From the NCBI GenBank assembly GCA_023334545.1, contig JAADVB010000129.1, forward strand, positions 1-51,191: a stretch of 51,191 nt of DNA, in the 5' to 3' direction. The stretch comes from Salisapilia sapeloensis CBS 127946. Taxonomy: Eukaryota; Protista; Oomycota. The notes beneath the pieces were generated by a model. That model did not search any database, was not told where the DNA came from, and saw nothing but the letters and a program-made list of their open reading frames with translations. This document shows positions 33,542 to 48,680 of the stretch, piece after piece; the stretch's first letter is position 1; each line of letters opens with the position of its first letter. Position numbers and translations under genes: made by a program.

Positions 33542-34493
33542 ATGCTAGTTGTACGATGTGACCGAGCCTCTCTGCTCCTACTTGCGCTTGTAGCTCTACA
33601 GTGTATACTGTATGCACGTGCGAGTTCCGTCTGTGACAGCATTGCTGAGTGCTGTGATGTTTGTGGCGACGACTCGTATCGATGTGCTCGAGGACCATGC
33701 AGCACGGCGTTTGTGCCAGCCAAGCTCTTTAGCATGTCCGTCCCGACGGAAGATGTGAGCTTCTGGGACGTCGTCATGGTCATGCTAACGATCATGCCGT
33801 ACATGGTGCCGGTGTTTCTGGCGCTTGACTTCCTCTTTTGGCACCACACGTGGGCACGCCTTGTGCTGCTCTTGTTCATCCCGATGTGCGCACTTGTGAA
33901 CATTATCGTCGTTAAGATCCTAACGGCGGCAGGAGGATGCCCAGACTGTCCACGACCATGCGGGTATGTTTTTATCTATCCTTCTAGAGGCTCTCATCTT
34001 ATTGATCTTAACTTCTAGGTCTTGTAATGAAGCCGATGGGATGCCGTCCGGTCATTCAGCGAATGGCGTCGGCTTTGTCCTCTACGTTTTGCTCGAATAT
34101 GCTTCTGGATGCGGCCGAGATTGGGACATCAAGTGGAAAGTTGCCATGTCAGTCTTTTTGATGATTATCCTACTACCGGTGCCGTACAGTCGCATCTTCC
34201 TTGGTGACCACACGGTCGAGCAAGTGCTCATTGGCTGTGCGGAAGGTATAGTGTTTGCCATCCTCTGGTTCATCCTGTTCCGAAAGGTCGTGGCGCACCG
34301 CATGGACGGCGTCAACGAATACTTTGGCCGGACCAAGTACTTGCACTTTATCCATCTCCATAACGACTTTTACGTTGCTCCTCGGGCACCATCCGCCAAT
34401 AACGAGACGGTCGGGACGCAAGACGTTTCCCTTGTTGAGAACGGCAACGCGTCTCCTCGGAGCGACTTCAACTCTAGTAACGAACCCAAGTAA
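33542..34493 (+). CDS. PAP2 (DOLPP1-like) lipid phosphate phosphatase with signal peptide and Cys-rich N-terminal module, copy A
   Basis: Intron 33964-34018. Signal-like LLLLALVALQCILYARA, CDSIAECCDVCGDDSYRCARGPCS, K...CPDCPRPCG|SC, GMPSGHS, SRIFLGDHTVEQV. Confidence 0.88.
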
Positions 34494-34659
34494 ACGACTT
34501 TTGTAGATTTTCTGTCACTTGTAGCAGCTGTTTTCGTGATGGACTGAGATTGCGTAATCGATGACGACAAGATGTCAGTGGAGTAAATTTTGTGTCTCTC
34601 TATCCTTCGACTATCATCAGTCCAGTCACTTTTTTCTTATCGCCTCTCGACAGACTGCC

Positions 34660-35537
34660 ATGGCGCAATGCAGTACGTTTGAAGAATGCTGTGACCTGTG
34701 TGGAGTTGACTCGACTCGATGTGCACGTGGACCGTGCAGTCAGCTTTATCTGATCAATGAGTTCTTTAGCTTTAGCATGCCTCTTGAAGACATTGGCTTC
34801 TGGGACGTCGTCTTTAGCTTCTACGGGATGGTCCCGTACTTATTTATCATTGGTGTCGCGCTCGAGTTTTTATTTCACCGACATAATTGGTCCAGGATTA
34901 TCCTTATGCTCTTCATCGGCATTGAGACCGGGATCAATGGGATCATCGGTATTGCGCTAGGAGACTGTAGCACATGTGACCGTCCGTGTGGAAATTGCTT
35001 GGGATCGCACGGTACTATCGTAATATTACCACATCTAAGATGCAAATGGACTAATTGGAACCTCTAGGTATGCCGTCTGGACACTCGATGAACTCCATTA
35101 GCGTCACGACATTGTGTCTCCTGGAGCTGTATCGAGGACATCTTCGTTACCTGCCGATGACCAAGAAGATCATCATCGCCTCCATCGCCATCCTCCTCTT
35201 GGTACCAGTGCCGTACGGTCGAGTCTACTTGGGTGACCACGACTCGATCCAAGTAATCATCGGCAGTGCCGACGGCATCGTCTTTGCTTTCCTCTTCTTC
35301 ATCGTGCTGCACAAGTGGCTCGTAAATGTCCTTGACTGGATTACAGAAAAGCTTACAAAACTTTCACGAGGCTACATTGTCATCGAGAACGACCTGAAGA
35401 TCGAATCCAAGCTCCCAGTCACCGTCCACGATCGATTGCTCGAGGCAGATGCAGACAATACGAGTAAATATGACAAGGATAGTTCAACAGAAGAGTGTCC
35501 ATGGACGGAAGAAGACACGACGGTCAAAACCACCTAA
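34660..35537 (+). CDS. PAP2 (DOLPP1-like) protein with Cys-rich module, copy B (no evident signal peptide)
   Basis: Intron 35012-35067. CSTFEECCDLCGVDSTRCARGPCS, CSTCDRPCGNC, G|MPSGHS, GRVYLGDHDSIQV. Confidence 0.85.
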
Positions 35538-35594
35538 GTTAAATCTTTTGTGCATCTCCAATTGAAATACATTTTCCCATTTGCATGTACTATC

Positions 35595-36392
35595 CTAGGC
35601 TTGTAGTAGAGGTCTTTCGGCCGAAGATCGACGATCTAAAGTGTAGTCGTCCGTGAATTTCATGTGGTCATTCGTTAGACGTGCGATCCGGCGGGATGCA
35701 GTTACCAAGTGACGGTGACGAACGAGTGTGCGGACGAGGAGTTCGTAGAAGAAGGTTACGAGAATGCCGTGGACGGTGCCGACGAGTACCTGGATGAGGC
35801 TGTGGTCACCGAGGTATACTCGGCTCCACGCGACGGGGCCGAAGAGGATGAGAGTGATGGAGACGTAGAGCATACGCTTAGAAGGGGAGAAGCGCTTGCC
35901 GAAGCCGCAGCTCATTTCCACGATCATCCACAGCGTCAGTCCAGCAGCGTTGGCGGCGTGGCCGGATGGCAGCCCCGAATTACTGACGCAGGCTCCGCAC
36001 GGCCGAGCACAGATCTCGCAGTGCCCGGCGGCTTTGTGTAGGATCAAGTAGACGATGGCGATGCACGCGACGACCATGAGACCAAAGACTCTGGCCCACG
36101 TACGGTGCCAGAAGAGGATATCTAGAAGCACTAGGAACGGTAGGACGTACGGCACCATGCCATAGAACGTCGCAGCGATATTTAGGAAGGAAGGTTCGAG
36201 CGGCATGCTCAGGTCAAAGATATCGGCCATGATAAAGTTGGTCGAGCATGGACCACGAGCACATCGGACGGAATCAGGTCCACACATTTCGCAGCACGAG
36301 TTCTCGGTCGAGCACATTTTCCCATCAGCTTCAAAATCTGCTGCCACAAGCGGCAAGACAAGTAGGAAGAGGATTAGAGGCGAGAAACGCAT
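35595..36392 (-). CDS. PAP2 (DOLPP1-like) protein with signal peptide and Cys-rich module, copy C (intronless)
   Basis: MRFSPLILFLLVLPLVAA, CSTENSCCEMCGPDSVRCARGPCS, HKAAGHCEICARPCGAC, GLPSGHA, SRVYLGDHSLIQV. Confidence 0.9.
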   Translation of the reverse strand: MRFSPLILFLLVLPLVAADFEADGKMCSTENSCCEMCGPDSVRCARGPCSTNFIMADIFDLSMPLEPSFLNIAATFYGMVPYVLPFLVLLDILFWHRTWARVFGLMVVACIAIVYLILHKAAGHCEICARPCGACVSNSGLPSGHAANAAGLTLWMIVEMSCGFGKRFSPSKRMLYVSITLILFGPVAWSRVYLGDHSLIQVLVGTVHGILVTFFYELLVRTLVRHRHLVTASRRIARLTNDHMKFTDDYTLDRRSSAERPLLQA

Positions 36393-36621
36393 GGCTGTCG
36401 TGGTGGACGATATAGAAGTGAGGCTGGAAGGGTGCCAAATGATCTTTAGACCAGATATAAAAAGGTCATTCTTGAAGCTCCTACCGGCATCGATGCTTCA
36501 TGGTAACTTTGGTATCATGTCCTAAGCTGTTGATGGTAATGATAGAGTAGTAGACATTTGCACGTGAAGTATAAAGTCAATTCTTCTGGTGTTTGCATTG
36601 GCATGGATATGGACACTTATA

Positions 36622-37434
36622 CTACGCATCAGACGCTAGTTGGTAGTCATCTCTCGGTGCCCCGTCGAGTGTATAGTCGTCCTTGATGTGCACATGTCCT
36701 TTCGTAAAGCGCTCTACCTTGCCACTTGCAGACTCGAGTTTTCGATGGCGAAGGCATTTGCGCAGGATTATAAAGTAGACCACGGCCACGGCGATCCCTT
36801 CGGCGGTGCCGATGACCAGTTGCTCCCAGACGTGGTCACCGACATATGCGCGTCCCCATGACACGGGCGCGAAGAGAATGAGCGAAATGATAATGGCAGA
36901 GATTCGCGATGACATGGACCATCGACGACCAAAGCCCAAGATCATCTCGAGGATCATCCAAACGGTCAGTCCTGCAGCGTTGGCAGCGTGTCCGGATGGC
37001 ATGCCAGACGAGTCGAGGCAAGTTCCGCACGGACGAGAGCAAATAGAGCACTCTCCGACTGCGTTCTGGATGATCAGGTAGACGATGGCGATGGCTAAAC
37101 ACAGTAGGAGACAGAAGACTCGAGCCCATGAACGGTGCCAGAAGAGCAGGTCCAAGAGAACGAGAAACGGCACAATGTACGGTAGCATGCCGTACAGAGT
37201 CCCGAGGAAGCCGAGGAAGGTCATGTGAGTCGGGGCGCTGACATCGAAGATATGCGTCATGATAAAGTCGCTTGAGCACGGGCCTCGGGCGCACCGAACA
37301 GAGTCTTCACCGCATGAGTTACAGCACTCTTCTTTAGTCGAGCACCCACCATCGCCAGACGATTGCGCTACCACAATCGGAACGAGGAGCAGTAGTAGTA
37401 GCAGCAAGAAGTTGACGCGGGATGGAGATTGCAT
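36622..37434 (-). CDS. PAP2 (DOLPP1-like) protein with signal peptide and Cys-rich module, copy D (intronless)
   Basis: FLLLLLLLVPIVVA, CSTKEECCNSCGEDSVRCARGPCS, CSICSRPCGTC, GMPSGHA, GRAYVGDHVWEQL. Confidence 0.9.
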   Translation of the reverse strand: MQSPSRVNFLLLLLLLLVPIVVAQSSGDGGCSTKEECCNSCGEDSVRCARGPCSSDFIMTHIFDVSAPTHMTFLGFLGTLYGMLPYIVPFLVLLDLLFWHRSWARVFCLLLCLAIAIVYLIIQNAVGECSICSRPCGTCLDSSGMPSGHAANAAGLTVWMILEMILGFGRRWSMSSRISAIIISLILFAPVSWGRAYVGDHVWEQLVIGTAEGIAVAVVYFIILRKCLRHRKLESASGKVERFTKGHVHIKDDYTLDGAPRDDYQLASDA

Positions 37435-37677: not shown

Positions 37678-37809
37678 ATGCCGTGCACCAGCTTTATCAA
37701 ATCGTCCATGCACACGATATCCTGAGCACGCATGGCTTCACTTTGTCGCATGCTAATGCACTATCCGTTTCACAGTTTTTTCAATGAACATTCAATTTTC
37801 GTTTGCAAT

Positions 37810-40800
37810 ATGTCGCTAGGTGGCCTGGCTCCGATCGGCGGAAATTCCAAGTCTACTTCTGCCAAGCGAGATGATCTGACGAGTGGATTGATGTCCTTGA
37901 CCTCGCCTTTGGGTAGTGCCAGTGAGCATGGAAACGATTTGGATATGGATGACTTTGATGTTGATATGCTCCTTGGTGACGGTCCATCTGCATCGTCGAA
38001 AGCCAAGTCTCCAAGTAGCAAGAAGACAAGTTCTTCGTCAGCCAAGAAGAGTAGTCATGATAAATCAAAAAGTAAAGACTCTAAGTCGAAGAAGAAGAAA
38101 GAAGTACGTTACCACTTAGATCAGTGTGTGTCTGCTATCATTTCACGTTGATCCTTGTACTAGTCCAAGAAGAAATCTACAACCGAATCGCCCTTTAACT
38201 ACTCCTTCGAGGAAGATGTACCATCATCGCCTATCAAGAAAAAAACAGGGCTCGACTCGGAGTTTGCCAGTATACTCGGACTAGACGATGGTATGGAGAG
38301 CTCTAGTTTCACTGCGTTGGAAGATAAAGCGGACACATTTGGACATGAAACTAGCAGTGATATGAAGTATAGTACTGCAAAGGACCCACCTAGAATTAAT
38401 ACTCCACTTGCACAAACCACAGATACAGATTTGGTAGCCGGTCTGCCTACTACACTGCAAGACACCGCAGGTTCAGAGTTTGGTATCGATGCATCTTTCT
38501 TTGCTGATATTGGAGCAAGCCAAAGTGACAATCTACCTTCTTTTCGAAGTGAATCGAACGAACCAACCCGACGTAGAGGTCGTCGCCGACATGCTACGGC
38601 AGAAAAAAGTGACAAGGAGGAATCTCTTACAGATAACGCGACGGATAAACCAAAGCAAGAAGTTCCATTCGAGTCCCGATGGGACAAAATGTTTGGTGGA
38701 TCGAAACCAGCGGCACGAGAGGAGACGAAAGCAGAGTTAGCTTTGGGGAAAGATAGAGATAAAGATGAAGAAATAAAGGGCACGACTCCAAAGTTACAAG
38801 ACCAGGAAACTACGTTACCACCAGCTAAAGTAGCAGATACGAAGCCAACATCAAATGTTAAAGAACAAGAGACATCATCTGCGTTTGCACAGGATGACTT
38901 GCTGGCTGATCTTGGTATTCTGGATATATCTCCACCGAAGAAGATCGAGAAATCTAGTCAAGATGATGTGAAGAATCCAGAGGAAAACATATCAAGCAGT
39001 TTTATGTCGAAAATGTTCCCGAATGAAAAGGTTGAAATTGGGGATGACCAAAAGATCTCTAAACCAGTCGATGAACGGGTGGAGAAAGTATCTGTAGATG
39101 TAGAGCAACCAAAGGAAGCCGTGTTAAAACAAAAGCTAGAAGAGAAAGTTGAAACTATCAGTGCTCGTGATAGTCTACTCCTCGATCTAGTACCAACTGA
39201 CACACCTCCACGAAGTCCTGTTATGGCTCTAAGGAAAAGTTTTTCTTTAAAAGCACCACCTACGCCCGAAGACACCTCGAAGATAGTGCTTGACAAGAAA
39301 GTGGAGCATGAGGAGTTACCAAAGCCTGACAAACTAACCGAGGCAGTTTCTAAACCAAAGGTACAAGAGACCAAGTTTGATCTAGCTATCGACTTTAGTC
39401 CAATGTCGTCTCCAGTACGCGACCCACCAGCGCCATCGCCGGGTACTGTAAAAACATTGCGAGCAAGGACAAACAGCATGAATGAGTCGGAGTTTGAGCA
39501 GTCAAAAGAAAGCTTGCTGGAAGAGATTCTATCTCCACCAGTATCTCCGATTTTGACAAAACAAAGGTCGTCTCCAGCTCTCTTAGAGGTACCTGATAAC
39601 GCGGACGCGTCATCGATGGATGCTGAGAAGCCTCAAGACGATCTCAAGTACAGCGTGACCAAAATACCGGAGGAGGTTGAAGAAGAGAATGCTACAGCCA
39701 CCTTGGCATCGGCTGTAGAAGTAATCAAAGAAGTTGTAGATAGTGATAAAAGCGTAGACGTAGAACCAAAGACCGTGCCGTCATCAAAGCAGCCCCATGG
39801 ACATTTGGATGCTGTTGAAAAGCAAGCATTCGAGTCCCAAATATCTGACCTTCAAAAGCTGCTTCAGGCTAAACAAGAAGAATACGATCAAGCGTTTCAA
39901 CGTTGCCAAGACACGGAAACTGCGAAAAGCGTTTTACAAGCTCAGGTGAACTCACTTCAGCAGGAGATACAACATTTGCATGAGCGTCTGAGCAAGTCTG
40001 AATACGACCGGCAAACGCTTCAGCAGGAGCTATCGTCTGCTCGAGCCGACCTAAGTGCCCAGGTTGCCACTTGCCATCATCTGGAGCAGGATAAGGCATC
40101 ATTCGACCGACAGGCCCAAAGCTTACGAGACCAGCAATCCCGACTGAGTCAGCAGCTCGTCGAGGAGAGGTCTGCGCATCAATCGACACAAAATCGCTTG
40201 GCGGAGCTCCAGCTTCAGACTAGTGAATTGAATGAAAGGCATCGGTCTCAGACGAAGAGCCAAATGGATAGTGTTCTACAGCAGCTCCATACAGCTCTCG
40301 CTCGTTTGCAAAGTCGACAAGAACAGGCTTCGATGGAAGACACATCTCGAGGCGTAGTCGAAGGTGAAAGCAGAATGAGAATGATCACGTCGCTTGAAGC
40401 AAGTGCTCGATCGTGTGCACGGCAGAGTGAAGAAGAGTGCCACCGACTAGCAAGTATCTTGTCGAGCCTAGAGTCGACACTTCGGCAATCTCGGCAAGAG
40501 GTAGCAGACGACAAGGAGAGGCTTCGACAGGAGCAGCATCGACTGGATACGCTAGCATCCCATTTCCAAGCCCAAACCAGTGTTTTGCACACTAGTGCGG
40601 ATGCGAATACGCAGTTGATGTCAAAATGGCTGACAACCTCTCTCCAAGACGTACGCACAGCTGAAGCACGGTTGGCCACACGGCGGTCCGAGCTGGAGGA
40701 TCAAGAGAGACAACTGTTTGATGAAAGAGCTCAGTTCGCTGCTTATCGGGAGGAGACGATGGAGCAGCAGAAGAAAGACAGTAGTAGACTACAGCAGGAA

Positions 40801-41496
40801 AAGCAAAAGTTGGATGCACGATGGCAGAAACTGGCGACCGAGAAGGAGAAGTTCGAAGCACGGGTTCAGTCCTACGACCATGACTTGGATGAAATTAATC
40901 GATGGCATACGTTTTTGCAGGAAGAGCGACAACGTATCGATCGAAAAGCGAGTCATGTAGCACAAGTAGCTTCGGAAGTGGAGCGAATGTCACAAGAGAT
41001 GGTTCAAAGAGAGAGTGTTGCATCGCAGACACAGAAAGAGATAGATGACCGTAGCAATGACGTCGAAAGCAGAAATAAAGAGGTGATAAGGCGCTTTAGT
41101 GAGCTGAAAGACCGTGAGCGTAGACTACAGCAGCATGCTAACCAAGTCGATCGGATGCGTGCGCGACTACTGTCCGAGCGCAAGGCATCCACAACGACGT
41201 CTGACAATACTCCGCCCTCGATGTCCACTTGTAGTAATCAAGAGGAAGACTCCAAAGCTTCAACGCCGATAGGTGGCATGTCTGTGGATGCACCAGTACA
41301 GATGAAGAGCTATAGCTGGGAACCAACTACCGACTATCAAATACACAAAGGTCGGGGGTCGACGTTACCACCAGCCTTGCGAAAGCTAGTGGATGACCAC
41401 TGGAGGACTCGCCGTTTGCTTCATTCAGCCCCCACGTCACTCCAAAGAGACCGCATGTGGCTACATGCGATCGGACTCGGTGTGTCCGATGCATAA
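37810..41496 (+). CDS. Large protein (about 1200 aa) with disordered N-terminus and long C-terminal coiled coil; tentatively FBF1-like basal-body/transition-fibre protein
   Basis: Exons 37810-38103 and 38164-41496 (60 nt intron). S/K/D-rich N-terminal two thirds, then about 450 aa of heptad coiled coil (LEASARSCARQSEEECHRLASILSSLE). The FBF1 assignment is by architecture only. Confidence 0.7.
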
Positions 41497-47527: not shown

Positions 47528-48680
47528 CTAGTTAATGCCGATCGAGTTGAGGAATCGAAGCGAGAGCTCTACACCTAGGAAGCAGGCGGCGTTCGCAGGG
47601 AAGGCACGTGCCATCGCTGGACCGAGGCCATGGAAGAGTGCCGACGCGCCCTCTTCCTTCATGAGCACTTGGTAGCAGTGGAAGATGCCGCGGTACGTTC
47701 CGTCCGGAGCGGTCTGGATGCGGCTCTTGAGCACATCTGGAGGCATGGCGAGCGTCCAGTTCATCATACCAGCAAACCCTCCGGCCATGAAGAGTCTCGT
47801 GGCACTCAAGTCCTCCGTACGTGTTCCCTTGGGCGTAAAGGCACGCTTGAGTGCTTCGAATCCACCAAAGTATGCGACGGAACTACAGGAAGATGAGTGA
47901 CATGTAGAGAAGAGAGGAGAAGGAGACGTACGCAGGGATGTCTCGCAGGAGCGTGGCTTCCCAACCTCGGTAGACGCTGCTCAGACCGCCAGTCTTGTAC
48001 AGCTTCTTGCCGCAGTCAACCATGCCGTCGTAGAGCTTAGGCTCGCCTCGCTCCATGGCTTGGTTCTGGATCTGAAGCAGACACTTGATGCGCTCGCCTG
48101 GCGCCATGAAGACCGTCGCGGGGATGGCGGAGAAACCTCCGGCGAACATGAGCTGACCCATGGAGCTCGCTTGGTCCGGAGGAGTGCCCATGGCTTTACG
48201 CTAGACATGATAACGTTAGGAGGATGGTGCAGGAGGAGGAGGGAGGATGCGTACAGCAATGAGCTTGCCCATGTCGTTTCCCCAGAAGCACACGGCAAAG
48301 ATGGGGGTGACGCCGGTGAGAGGGGCGGAGAGGCCGCGGTAGAGACCCTTAGGCCCATCCTTGGCAATAAGCTTCCGGGCGCAGTCCATGGCGCCAGTGT
48401 ACATAGGCGCTTCGCCGGCTGCCGGTTTGGGCATGGTCTGGAGGTTGACCTTGACGAGATCCATGGGGTGTCCGACGGCCACGAGGCACATGCCTAGAGG
48501 TATGTGAGTTTATAGCAAGCAAGTAGAATTGTACGAGTCCGCACCTCCGAATCCGCCGGTGACAAACGAGACGAGTCCAGACGGCGCTAGAGCATATCGA
48601 CAGATAAGATACTTTTGGATCTAATTCGACAGAAACGAAAGTTTACGTTGTTTGTCCTGAGTCTTTGCTTCCGTGGCCAT
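47528..48680 (-). CDS. SLC25A20: Mitochondrial carnitine/acylcarnitine carrier, 5 exons
   Basis: GGFG|GMCLVAVGHPMDLVKVNLQT, APGERIKCLLQIQ, MPPDVLKSRIQTAP, RAFPANAACFLG; three PxD/ExxK carrier repeats. Confidence 0.93.

What the first reader, a model, noticed from the sequence alone, without database searches (positions are those of the whole stretch)
33542..37434. Four-gene family: cysteine-knot module fused to a DOLPP1-like PAP2 phosphatase with a CxxC-RP-CxxC active-site loop
Seen: four paralogs (A+, B+, C-, D-, facing inward) share an N-terminal C-x5-CC-x2-CG-x-DS-x-RCARGPCS module with six invariant Cys. They also carry four Cys bracketing the C1 RP (CxxC-x-RP-CxxC). Three have clear signal peptides. 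Known: PAP2 enzymes use KxxxxxxRP, PSGH and SRxxxxxHxxx(D/Q) motifs on the extracytoplasmic face; the C3 ending in Q and the RPCG...GMPS context resemble DOLPP1/Cax4, which has no such Cys module. Inference: signal peptide, then two TMs, puts all ten Cys on the lumenal/extracellular side, where they could form a disulfide-stabilised lid over the active site. This would be a surface or secretory lipid-phosphate phosphatase family (PA, DGPP, polyprenyl-PP or sphingoid-P substrates), perhaps acting at the host or environment interface. It is the only paralog expansion in an otherwise single-copy housekeeping region.
Basis: partly seen in the sequence, partly recalled or inferred. Interest (0 to 1): 0.8.

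Follow-up and report, generated by a model that had tools for sequence, protein, structure and literature searches.

The report
Oomycete PAP2 phosphatases with disulfide-stapled cap
Four neighbouring, expressed genes encode membrane lipid-phosphate phosphatases related to the dolichyl-diphosphate phosphatase DOLPP1, with a small cysteine-rich cap that seems disulfide-bonded onto the catalytic loop; the family is oomycete-restricted and unstudied, so it is a moderately interesting new variant of a known enzyme type.

Summary
Four paralogs lie at 33542-37434 in the order A+, B+, C-, D-. All are intact and all are transcribed. Transcript contigs confirm the single short intron in A and in B. Each copy has the six-Cys N-terminal module and a C-x2-C-x-RP-C-G-x-C loop.

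Only PAP2 (PF01569) matches in Pfam. The module has no Pfam model. An AlphaFold2 model of copy C (pLDDT 89.6) matches DOLPP1/Cwh8 best among reviewed proteins, and the match starts only after the module.

The family occurs in Phytophthora, Peronospora, Nothophytophthora, Pythium, Globisporangium and Lagenidium. It usually forms 2-4 tandem copies and carries only generic names. I found no paper on it.

New findings here:
- Cysteines are lost or gained in pairs across homologs (module Cys4 with loop Cys3, module Cys6 with loop Cys4). This argues for two disulfides that staple the module to the catalytic loop.
- The canonical C1 lysine position is Gly in 38 of 39 family sequences (Asn in one), while two module arginines are invariant.
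- Copy B has no signal peptide.
- The nearest relatives are protist DOLPP1-like proteins with a simpler two-Cys N-terminus.

Substrate and cellular location remain inferred. Other first-stage notes cover this same stretch; none concern other DNA.

The parts
33542..34493 (+). Gene A (298 aa): exon 1 33542-33963, intron 33964-34018 (55 nt, GTATGT..TAG), exon 2 34019-34493. It encodes a signal peptide, the Cys module and a 5-TM PAP2 domain.
   Evidence: ORFs, splice reconstruction, intron skipped in transcript contigs of 4 runs, PAP2 hit of 45.8 bits on exon 2.
34660..35537 (+). Gene B (273 aa): exon 1 34660-35011, intron 35012-35067 (56 nt, GTACTA..TAG), exon 2 35068-35537. It has no signal peptide; the module begins at residue 4.
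   Evidence: searches (contigs start at 34625-34657; no N-terminal hydrophobic segment), PAP2 hit of 43.1 bits.
35595..36392 (-). Gene C (265 aa, no intron): signal peptide, Cys module, 5-TM PAP2 domain. This copy was modelled.
   Evidence: PAP2 42.4 bits; AF2 pLDDT 89.6, pTM 0.85; transcribed.
36622..37434 (-). Gene D (270 aa, no intron): signal peptide, Cys module, 5-TM PAP2 domain. It is sister to C.
   Evidence: PAP2 30.4 bits; transcribed; C+D clade, SH-aLRT 99.
33632..33700 (+). Six-Cys module of A (residues 31-53).
   Evidence: Motif scan.
34669..34737 (+). Six-Cys module of B (residues 4-26).
   Evidence: Motif scan.
36246..36314 (-). Six-Cys module of C (residues 27-49), with the invariant R43 and R46.
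   Evidence: Model pLDDT is 76-95 over this part.
37276..37344 (-). Six-Cys module of D (residues 31-53).
   Evidence: Motif scan.
35958..36020 (-). Catalytic C1-C2 loop of C (residues 125-145): C-x2-C-x-RP-C-G-x-C...PSGH.
36988..37050 (-). Catalytic C1-C2 loop of D (residues 129-149).
33938..34055 (+). Catalytic C1-C2 loop of A (residues 133-153). The intron interrupts it after RPCG.
34966..35084 (+). Catalytic C1-C2 loop of B (residues 103-123). The intron interrupts it 8 codons further on than in A.

Best explanation
The four genes encode an oomycete-restricted branch of the DOLPP1-type PAP2 lipid-phosphate phosphatases.

Proposed architecture. After signal-peptide cleavage (in B, by translocation of the acidic N-tail) a module of about 25 residues lies on the lumenal or extracellular face. 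Five TM helices follow. They place the C1 (RP), C2 (PSGH) and C3 (R-x5-H-x3-Q) motifs on that same face, and the basic C-terminus lies in the cytosol.

Proposed staple. The module is tied covalently to the short C1-C2 catalytic loop by at least two disulfides: module Cys4 to the Cys of RPC, and module Cys6 to the last Cys of CGxC. The remaining six Cys form three more. The result is a rigid cap over the phosphate-binding pocket.

Proposed chemistry. His197 (C3) is the nucleophile, His145 (C2) is the acid, and Arg130 and Arg191 bind phosphate, as in other PAP2 enzymes. The canonical C1 Lys is absent. One of the invariant module arginines probably fills its role.

Most likely substrates are polyprenyl (dolichyl or shorter isoprenoid) diphosphates in the exoplasmic leaflet.

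Shown: genes, expression, family, fold, paired Cys changes. Inferred: topology, disulfides, chemistry, substrate.
For: - Gene structures and transcription.
- PAP2 above the Pfam cut-off in all four copies.
- R130, P131, P142, S143, G144, H145, R191 and H197 are invariant, and Q201 is present in 38 of 39 family sequences.
- The AF2 model is confident (pLDDT 89.6) and shows five TM helices plus three short module helices.
- The best reviewed structural matches are DOLPP1/Cwh8. The best solved structure is B. subtilis PgpB, 5jki.
- The profile-profile match to protist DOLPP1-like proteins has probability 100% and E 2e-50, and it includes the N-terminus.
- Hydropathy and charge: the module region has net charge -4 to -6, and the TM1-2 loop, TM3-4 loop and C-tail are basic.
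- Paired Cys changes. Every sequence without module Cys4 (W or Y) also lacks loop Cys3 (A, E; R in P. sojae). Every sequence without module Cys6 (A) also lacks loop Cys4 (I or A). No sequence has one change without the other. The other pair stays intact in each clade.
- dN/dS is roughly 0.14-0.35 between paralogs, with saturated dS.
- A DOLPP1 homolog can act on short isoprenoid diphosphates: Candida Cwh8 (PMC12505894).
Against: - The canonical C1 Lys position (-7 from Arg) is Gly in 38 of 39 family sequences (Asn in one), whereas the outgroup has Lys in 6 of 6. The Lys at -10 is variable: Ile in B and Asn in D; in A that aligned column is Thr, with a Lys three residues upstream after a 3-residue insertion. 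Activity may therefore be reduced or altered.
- Each Cys-pair change maps to a single clade, so it is one evolutionary event per pair.
No Cys-Cys or Arg-to-active-site distance was measured.
- There are no enzymatic, localisation or disulfide-mapping data.
- B lacks a signal peptide.
Confidence: 0.6

Rival explanations
1. These are simply the oomycete orthologs of housekeeping DOLPP1. They would recycle dolichyl diphosphate in the ER lumen after N-glycan transfer, and they happen to be duplicated and decorated in this lineage.
For: DOLPP1 proteins are the best structural matches. The nearest sequence relatives include proteins named dolichyldiphosphatase by their sources. Lumenal orientation of the active site is what DOLPP1 needs.
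Against: A separate AlphaFold DB fold cluster named 'Dolichyldiphosphatase' (A0A0W8DF57) matches only weakly and without the module. That accession block is used for Phytophthora proteins in PMC8092109, which hints at a canonical DOLPP1 besides this family; this is indirect evidence. A housekeeping enzyme would not be expected to lose its catalytic Lys, to exist as 2-4 diverging copies (35-57% identity) or to lose its signal peptide in one copy.
Confidence: 0.15
2. The family, or at least copies B and D, has lost phosphatase activity. It would then act as a lipid-phosphate-binding protein, sensor or regulatory subunit, that is, a pseudo-enzyme.
For: The canonical C1 Lys position is Gly in 38 of 39 family sequences. 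The nearby Lys (-10) is absent in B and D. The C3 Ser is Gly in B and D.
Against: All other catalytic residues (both His, both Arg, the PSG of C2) are invariant over 39 sequences spanning several oomycete orders. That is hard to explain without catalysis. Lys(-10) and the C3 Ser also vary in other species' copies, so B and D are not special. Purifying selection acts on all copies.
Confidence: 0.12
3. The ten cysteines form a metal (zinc) cluster or a reversible redox switch next to the catalytic Arg, not permanent structural disulfides.
For: Two CxxC motifs flank RP, and CxxC is a classic metal or redox motif.
Against: The predicted exoplasmic location is oxidising. Cys numbers stay even (10 or 8). 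Clades that lost one pair kept the other pair over long divergence, which fits independent disulfides and not a four-ligand metal site. Replacement residues are hydrophobic or unconstrained.
Confidence: 0.1
4. They are PAP2-superfamily lipid phosphotransferases, like sphingomyelin or inositol-phosphorylceramide synthases, and not hydrolases.
For: Aur1 IPC synthase appears among weak PDB fold matches (TM 0.43). The C1 Lys is missing, as it is in the transferases.
Against: The RP of C1 and the R of C3, typical of the phosphatases, are invariant. DOLPP1 and PgpB score far better than the synthases.
Confidence: 0.03

Closest known systems
DOLPP1 / Cwh8 (Cax4) dolichyldiphosphatase, eukaryotic PAP2 subfamily
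   Same: Best structural match among reviewed proteins (TM 0.58-0.67). Both have a short C1-C2 loop with RPC...GMPS(G/S)H and a C3 motif ending in Q. From knowledge of the family, the active site faces the exoplasmic or lumenal side.
   Different: DOLPP1 has no signal peptide and no Cys module; the alignments start after model residue 50. DOLPP1 has a canonical K-x6-RP, whereas this family has G-x-C-x2-C-x-RP. Identity is only 18-20%. DOLPP1 is normally single-copy, whereas this family forms tandem arrays of 2-4.
Protist (dinoflagellate, Amoebophrya, Colponema, MMETSP) DOLPP1-like PAP2 proteins, unnamed family
   Same: Nearest sequence relatives (E 1e-18 to 1e-10; hhalign E 2e-50). They share the C-terminal (N/D)(D/N)(Y/F) motif, the GSC of the loop and an N-terminal mini-domain with two Cys that align to module Cys2 and Cys5.
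   Different: They keep the canonical Lys. They have only four Cys (two N-terminal, two in a C-x3-C loop). They lack the RGPC insertion, the CxxC before RP and the invariant module arginines. At the position of module Cys4 they have Trp.
Bacillus subtilis PgpB (YodM), PDB 5jki
   Same: Best solved structure by sequence (E 1e-5) and by fold (TM 0.47/0.60). It has the same PAP2 helical core and the C2 and C3 motifs.
   Different: It is a bacterial enzyme with no Cys cap and a canonical C1 Lys. Its substrate is phosphatidylglycerophosphate.
Glucose-6-phosphatase G6PC1 (PDB 9j7v and others)
   Same: A PAP2-type ER enzyme with a lumenal active site. Its C3 ends in Q and it has a Cys next to the C1-C2 loop.
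   Different: It has nine TM helices, a soluble sugar-phosphate substrate and only a weak fold match (TM 0.35).

Membership tests
PAP2 superfamily (PF01569) | Pfam model match above the gathering score | tested here: met
   Scores are 45.8 (A), 43.1 (B), 42.4 (C) and 30.4 (D) bits against a cut-off of 27.2.
PAP2 superfamily (PF01569) | C1 motif K-x6-R-P | tested here: not met
   R and P are invariant, but the position 7 before R is Gly in 38 of 39 family sequences, against Lys in 6 of 6 outgroup sequences. A Lys 10 before R is present in only 22 of 39.
PAP2 superfamily (PF01569) | C2 motif P-S-G-H | tested here: met
   Invariant in 39 of 39 sequences, including A-D.
PAP2 superfamily (PF01569) | C3 motif S-R-x5-H-x3-(D/Q) | tested here: met
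   R and H are invariant. Q is present in 38 of 39. S is present in 34 of 39 and is Gly in B and D.
PAP2 superfamily (PF01569) | Helical membrane core fold | tested here: met
   The AF2 model (pLDDT 89.6) matches PgpB 5jki, LpxE 6ebu and G6PC1.
DOLPP1 / Cwh8 dolichyldiphosphatase | Closest fold and motif context (short RPC...GMPS(G/S)H loop, C3 ending in Q) | tested here: met
   Nine of the top eleven Swiss-Prot matches, including the top seven, are dolichyldiphosphatases. The motifs are read directly from the sequences.
DOLPP1 / Cwh8 dolichyldiphosphatase | Orthology: the one DOLPP1-type gene of the genome | tested here: inconclusive
   The whole genome could not be searched. A separate AFDB cluster named Dolichyldiphosphatase, probably from Phytophthora, exists. 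The family is multi-copy.
DOLPP1 / Cwh8 dolichyldiphosphatase | Hydrolysis of dolichyl diphosphate; complementation of yeast cwh8 | not testable with these tools
   This needs enzyme assays or genetics.
Oomycete Cys-module PAP2 family (unnamed; ESM Atlas cluster of 67 members, two AFDB fold clusters) | Six-Cys module C-x5-CC-x2-CG-x-DS-x-RC-x-RGPC plus loop C-x2-C-x-RP-C-G-x-C | tested here: met
   All four window copies have both features. The homologs have them too, apart from two clades that each lack one Cys pair.

The most novel reading that the evidence does not exclude
The cap would be part of the active site, not merely a lid. Disulfides would hold it so that an invariant module arginine (R43 or R46 of copy C) replaces the missing C1 lysine. 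That would make a PAP2 catalytic centre assembled from two covalently stapled segments. This re-tooled pocket would have shifted the family away from dolichyl-PP recycling towards another exoplasmic lipid or isoprenoid phosphate, at the plasma membrane or cell surface of oomycetes.
Probability: 0.25. Interest if true: 0.7.

Novelty: new variant of a known kind. Interest (0 to 1): 0.5.

Why it matters
PAP2 enzymes are well understood, but I found no description of one whose catalytic loop is disulfide-stapled to an N-terminal mini-domain and whose canonical C1 lysine is missing. If the family is active, it shows a new way to build or stabilise the PAP2 phosphate site.

The family is restricted to oomycetes, a group that includes major crop and fish pathogens. 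It is multi-copy and expressed, and its catalytic face is predicted to point outward. It is therefore a candidate lineage-specific marker or inhibitor target. Functional work on exoplasmic lipid-phosphate or isoprenoid-phosphate metabolism in these organisms could start from it.

The paired Cys changes give a directly testable disulfide map.

Tried and rejected
- Pfam scans of whole proteins at E up to 1, and of the module alone at E up to 10, found no domain for the module. The only hit was a non-significant spider-toxin match at E 0.16 on the module of the P. sojae homolog P0159.
- The word-indexed search with copy D alone found just one homolog. The exhaustive representative search and the profile search were needed to see the family.
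- A profile search with the protist outgroup, meant to reveal a canonical oomycete DOLPP1, returned only marine-protist sequences among the 8000 candidates scored, so it was uninformative.
- Six literature searches found no paper on the family. They covered oomycete PAP2, DOLPP1/CWH8 with Phytophthora, dolichyldiphosphatase with oomycete, locus tags of homologs, Phytophthora lipid phosphate phosphatase, and UniProt accession prefixes.
- Model coordinates are not exposed, so Cys-Cys distances could not be measured.
- dN/dS is only rough because synonymous sites are saturated.
- I rejected the idea that B and D are special pseudo-enzymes. The same Lys and Ser substitutions occur in copies of other species, and the canonical Lys position is Gly in 38 of 39 family sequences.
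- I rejected the upstream ATG at 34561 for B, because transcripts start downstream of it.
Full report
**What is there.** ORF listing, alignment and splice reconstruction show four paralogous genes in the order A+, B+, C-, D-.
- A runs 33542-33963 and 34019-34493, with a 55-nt GTATGT..TAG intron.
- B runs 34660-35011 and 35068-35537, with a 56-nt GTACTA..TAG intron.
- C (35595-36392) and D (36622-37434) have no intron.

Pairwise identity is 35-57%, with C and D closest. A self-BLAST of all 228 ORFs of at least 80 aa in the window finds no other paralog family, apart from a weak internal repeat near 47.5-48.5 kb. DNA repeats spaced 1030 nt (C/D) and 1037 nt (A/B) fit two tandem duplications of a unit of about 1 kb, arranged as an inverted pair of pairs.

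**Expression and gene models.** Transcript contigs from four RNA runs (two samples, one study) cover all four genes at 99-100% identity. They skip exactly 55 and 56 nt with GT..AG ends at the predicted places. B's contigs begin at 34625-34657. The upstream ATG at 34561 is therefore not in the mRNA, and B starts at 34660 with the module at residue 4 and no signal peptide. A, C and D have an N-terminal hydrophobic stretch followed by ARA, VAA or VVA. Synonymous sites between copies are saturated and dN/dS is roughly 0.14-0.35. The copies are therefore old and under purifying selection.

**Family assignment.** Pfam finds only PAP2 (PF01569), above its cut-off in all four copies. The match covers the C2/C3 half. 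The module alone matches nothing, even at E up to 10. PDB sequence search gives B. subtilis PgpB (5jki, E 1e-5) and human G6PC1.

An AlphaFold2 model of C, built on a 102-sequence alignment, has mean pLDDT 89.6 and pTM 0.85. It shows:
- a signal-peptide helix;
- three short helices in the module (30-37, 42-46, 53-58);
- five TM helices (69-94, 99-122, 144-162, 170-193, 199-223).

Against reviewed AlphaFold models the top hits are dolichyldiphosphatases from Dictyostelium, human, other mammals and yeast (TM 0.58-0.67, 18-20% identity). All of them align only from model residue about 50-61. Against AFDB fold clusters, only two clusters cover the module (A0A662WRL2 and K3X7F5). Every other hit starts after residue about 46.

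**Distribution.** The exhaustive representative search gave 11 clusters at E below 1e-30, of which ten cover the module and one (P0012) is N-terminally truncated, and then hundreds of weaker hits that start after the module. A profile search named the sources: many Phytophthora species, Peronospora farinosa, Nothophytophthora, Pythium insidiosum, [Pythium] brassicae, Globisporangium and Lagenidium giganteum. All are labelled 'hypothetical' or 'PAP2/haloperoxidase domain-containing'. The ESM Atlas holds a 67-member Oomycota cluster.

In [Pythium] brassicae, three copies sit next to the ortholog of the coiled-coil gene that flanks copy D in the window, in the same divergent orientation. The locus is therefore ancient. 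P. sojae has two tandem copies. No paper on the family was found.

**Origin of the module.** The nearest non-family relatives come from marine protists: MMETSP transcripts, Colponema, Noctiluca and Amoebophrya. One is named dolichyldiphosphatase by JGI, and an Anaeramoeba protein is named DOLPP1. They have a canonical K-x6-RP, a loop RP-x-GSC-x3-CGMPSGH and an N-terminal C-x-P-x-W-x7-CP(Y/F)G motif.

Profile-profile alignment (probability 100%, E 2e-50) puts their two N-terminal Cys on module Cys2 and Cys5, and their Trp on module Cys4. RGPC appears as an insertion. The oomycete module is therefore an elaboration of an older mini-domain, not a fused foreign domain.

**Disulfide evidence.** Across 39 family sequences the ten Cys are invariant except in two clades.
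- In one clade (Phytophthora, Nothophytophthora and unnamed assemblies), module Cys4 is W or Y and loop Cys3 (RPC) is A, E, or R in P. sojae.
- In the other clade, module Cys6 is A and loop Cys4 (CGxC) is I or A.

No sequence shows one change without its partner, and each clade keeps the other pair. On the tree, the first clade is sister to all the rest and shares its W/non-Cys state with the outgroup. That pair was therefore probably gained together. The second clade is nested (SH-aLRT 97), which makes it a joint loss.

This pattern is what two independent disulfides would give: Cys37-Cys132 and Cys49-Cys135 in copy C numbering. It is not what a four-ligand metal site would give. The caveat is that each pair rests on one evolutionary event, and I could not measure distances because model coordinates are not exposed.

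**Topology.** The module region is acidic (net -4 to -6). The TM1-TM2 turn, the TM3-TM4 loop and the C-tail are basic. The conclusion rests on the positive-inside rule and known PAP2 topology, not on an experiment.

**Catalytic residues.** R130, P131, P142, S143, G144, H145, R191 and H197 are invariant, and Q201 is present in 38 of 39. The canonical C1 Lys position (7 before Arg) is Gly in 38 of 39 family sequences, whereas the outgroup has Lys in 6 of 6. A Lys 10 before Arg occurs in only 22 of 39. In that column B has Ile, D has Asn, and A has Thr with a Lys three residues further upstream after a 3-residue insertion. The C3 Ser is Gly in B, D and three other sequences.

These substitutions therefore do not single out B and D as dead copies. 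The module residues R43 and R46 are invariant (38 of 38) and absent from the outgroup. They lie within a few residues of the Cys that bond to positions 2 and 5 after the catalytic Arg. My inference is that one of them substitutes for the lost Lys. This is untested.

**Function.** The best-supported reading is an exoplasmic-facing, DOLPP1-derived lipid or isoprenoid diphosphate phosphatase with a disulfide-stapled cap. Candida Cwh8 shows that DOLPP1-type enzymes can also act on farnesyl-PP (PMC12505894), so substrate shifts in this subfamily are plausible.

An AFDB cluster named Dolichyldiphosphatase (A0A0W8DF57) matches weakly and without the module. Its accession block is used for Phytophthora proteins in PMC8092109. 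This hints that oomycetes keep a canonical DOLPP1 and that the module family is a paralogous offshoot. The evidence is indirect.

There is one localisation lead. The S. parasitica plasma-membrane proteome lists a 32.2-kDa 'phosphatidic acid phosphatase', SPRG_12554, with a signal peptide and six predicted TM segments, enriched in detergent-resistant membranes (PMC11302233). I could not check whether it carries the module.

**Verdict.** Corrections are the non-canonical C1, the module's older roots and B's missing signal peptide. The host-interface role remains speculation. This is an uncharacterised, lineage-restricted variant of a known enzyme kind, and it is of moderate interest.

Noticed in passing
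window 33964-34018 and 35012-35067: The single introns of A and B lie 8 codons apart, in different phases (after RPCG in A, before GMPSGH in B). They are absent from C, D and the Pythium and Phytophthora homologs. Both are confirmed by transcript contigs. They look like independent or slid lineage-specific gains.
   Followed up: partly
window 35537-35595: Convergent genes B and C end 57 nt apart. Transcript assemblies in three of four runs join them into one contig (about 34625-36434), so their 3' ends probably overlap.
   Followed up: no
window 37732-41496 and L001 269-5206: The coiled-coil gene next to copy D has its ortholog next to the PAP2 cluster of [Pythium] brassicae, in the same divergent orientation (E 1e-10 and 3e-8). 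This is conserved synteny. The window gene appears split into two ORFs (37732-38151 and 38293-41496), so an intron or frame change lies between them.
   Followed up: partly
P0153, P0154, P0002 (homologs); L001 8001-9550: Several public gene models fuse two tandem paralogs (P. palmivora 489 aa, P. insidiosum 469 aa, a 400-aa MetaClust entry). The [Pythium] brassicae model P0001 adds a doubtful intron and tail; the plain ORF L001:7971-8894 gives a normal 307-aa protein.
   Followed up: partly
C-termini of homologs (alignment A3, columns about 350-375): Pythium and Phytophthora members end in a conserved Y-(V/A)-(N/Q)-x-P-x-T-P motif on the cytosolic tail, possibly a sorting signal. The four window copies lack it.
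   Followed up: no
PMC11302233, Table 1: Saprolegnia parasitica SPRG_12554 is a 'phosphatidic acid phosphatase' with a signal peptide, 32.2 kDa and 6 predicted TM segments. It is enriched in detergent-resistant plasma-membrane fractions.
   Followed up: no
window 47531-48509, minus strand: Three adjacent ORF pieces show weak mutual similarity (E about 3e-6 to 5e-6). This is probably an internal repeat within one gene.
   Followed up: no
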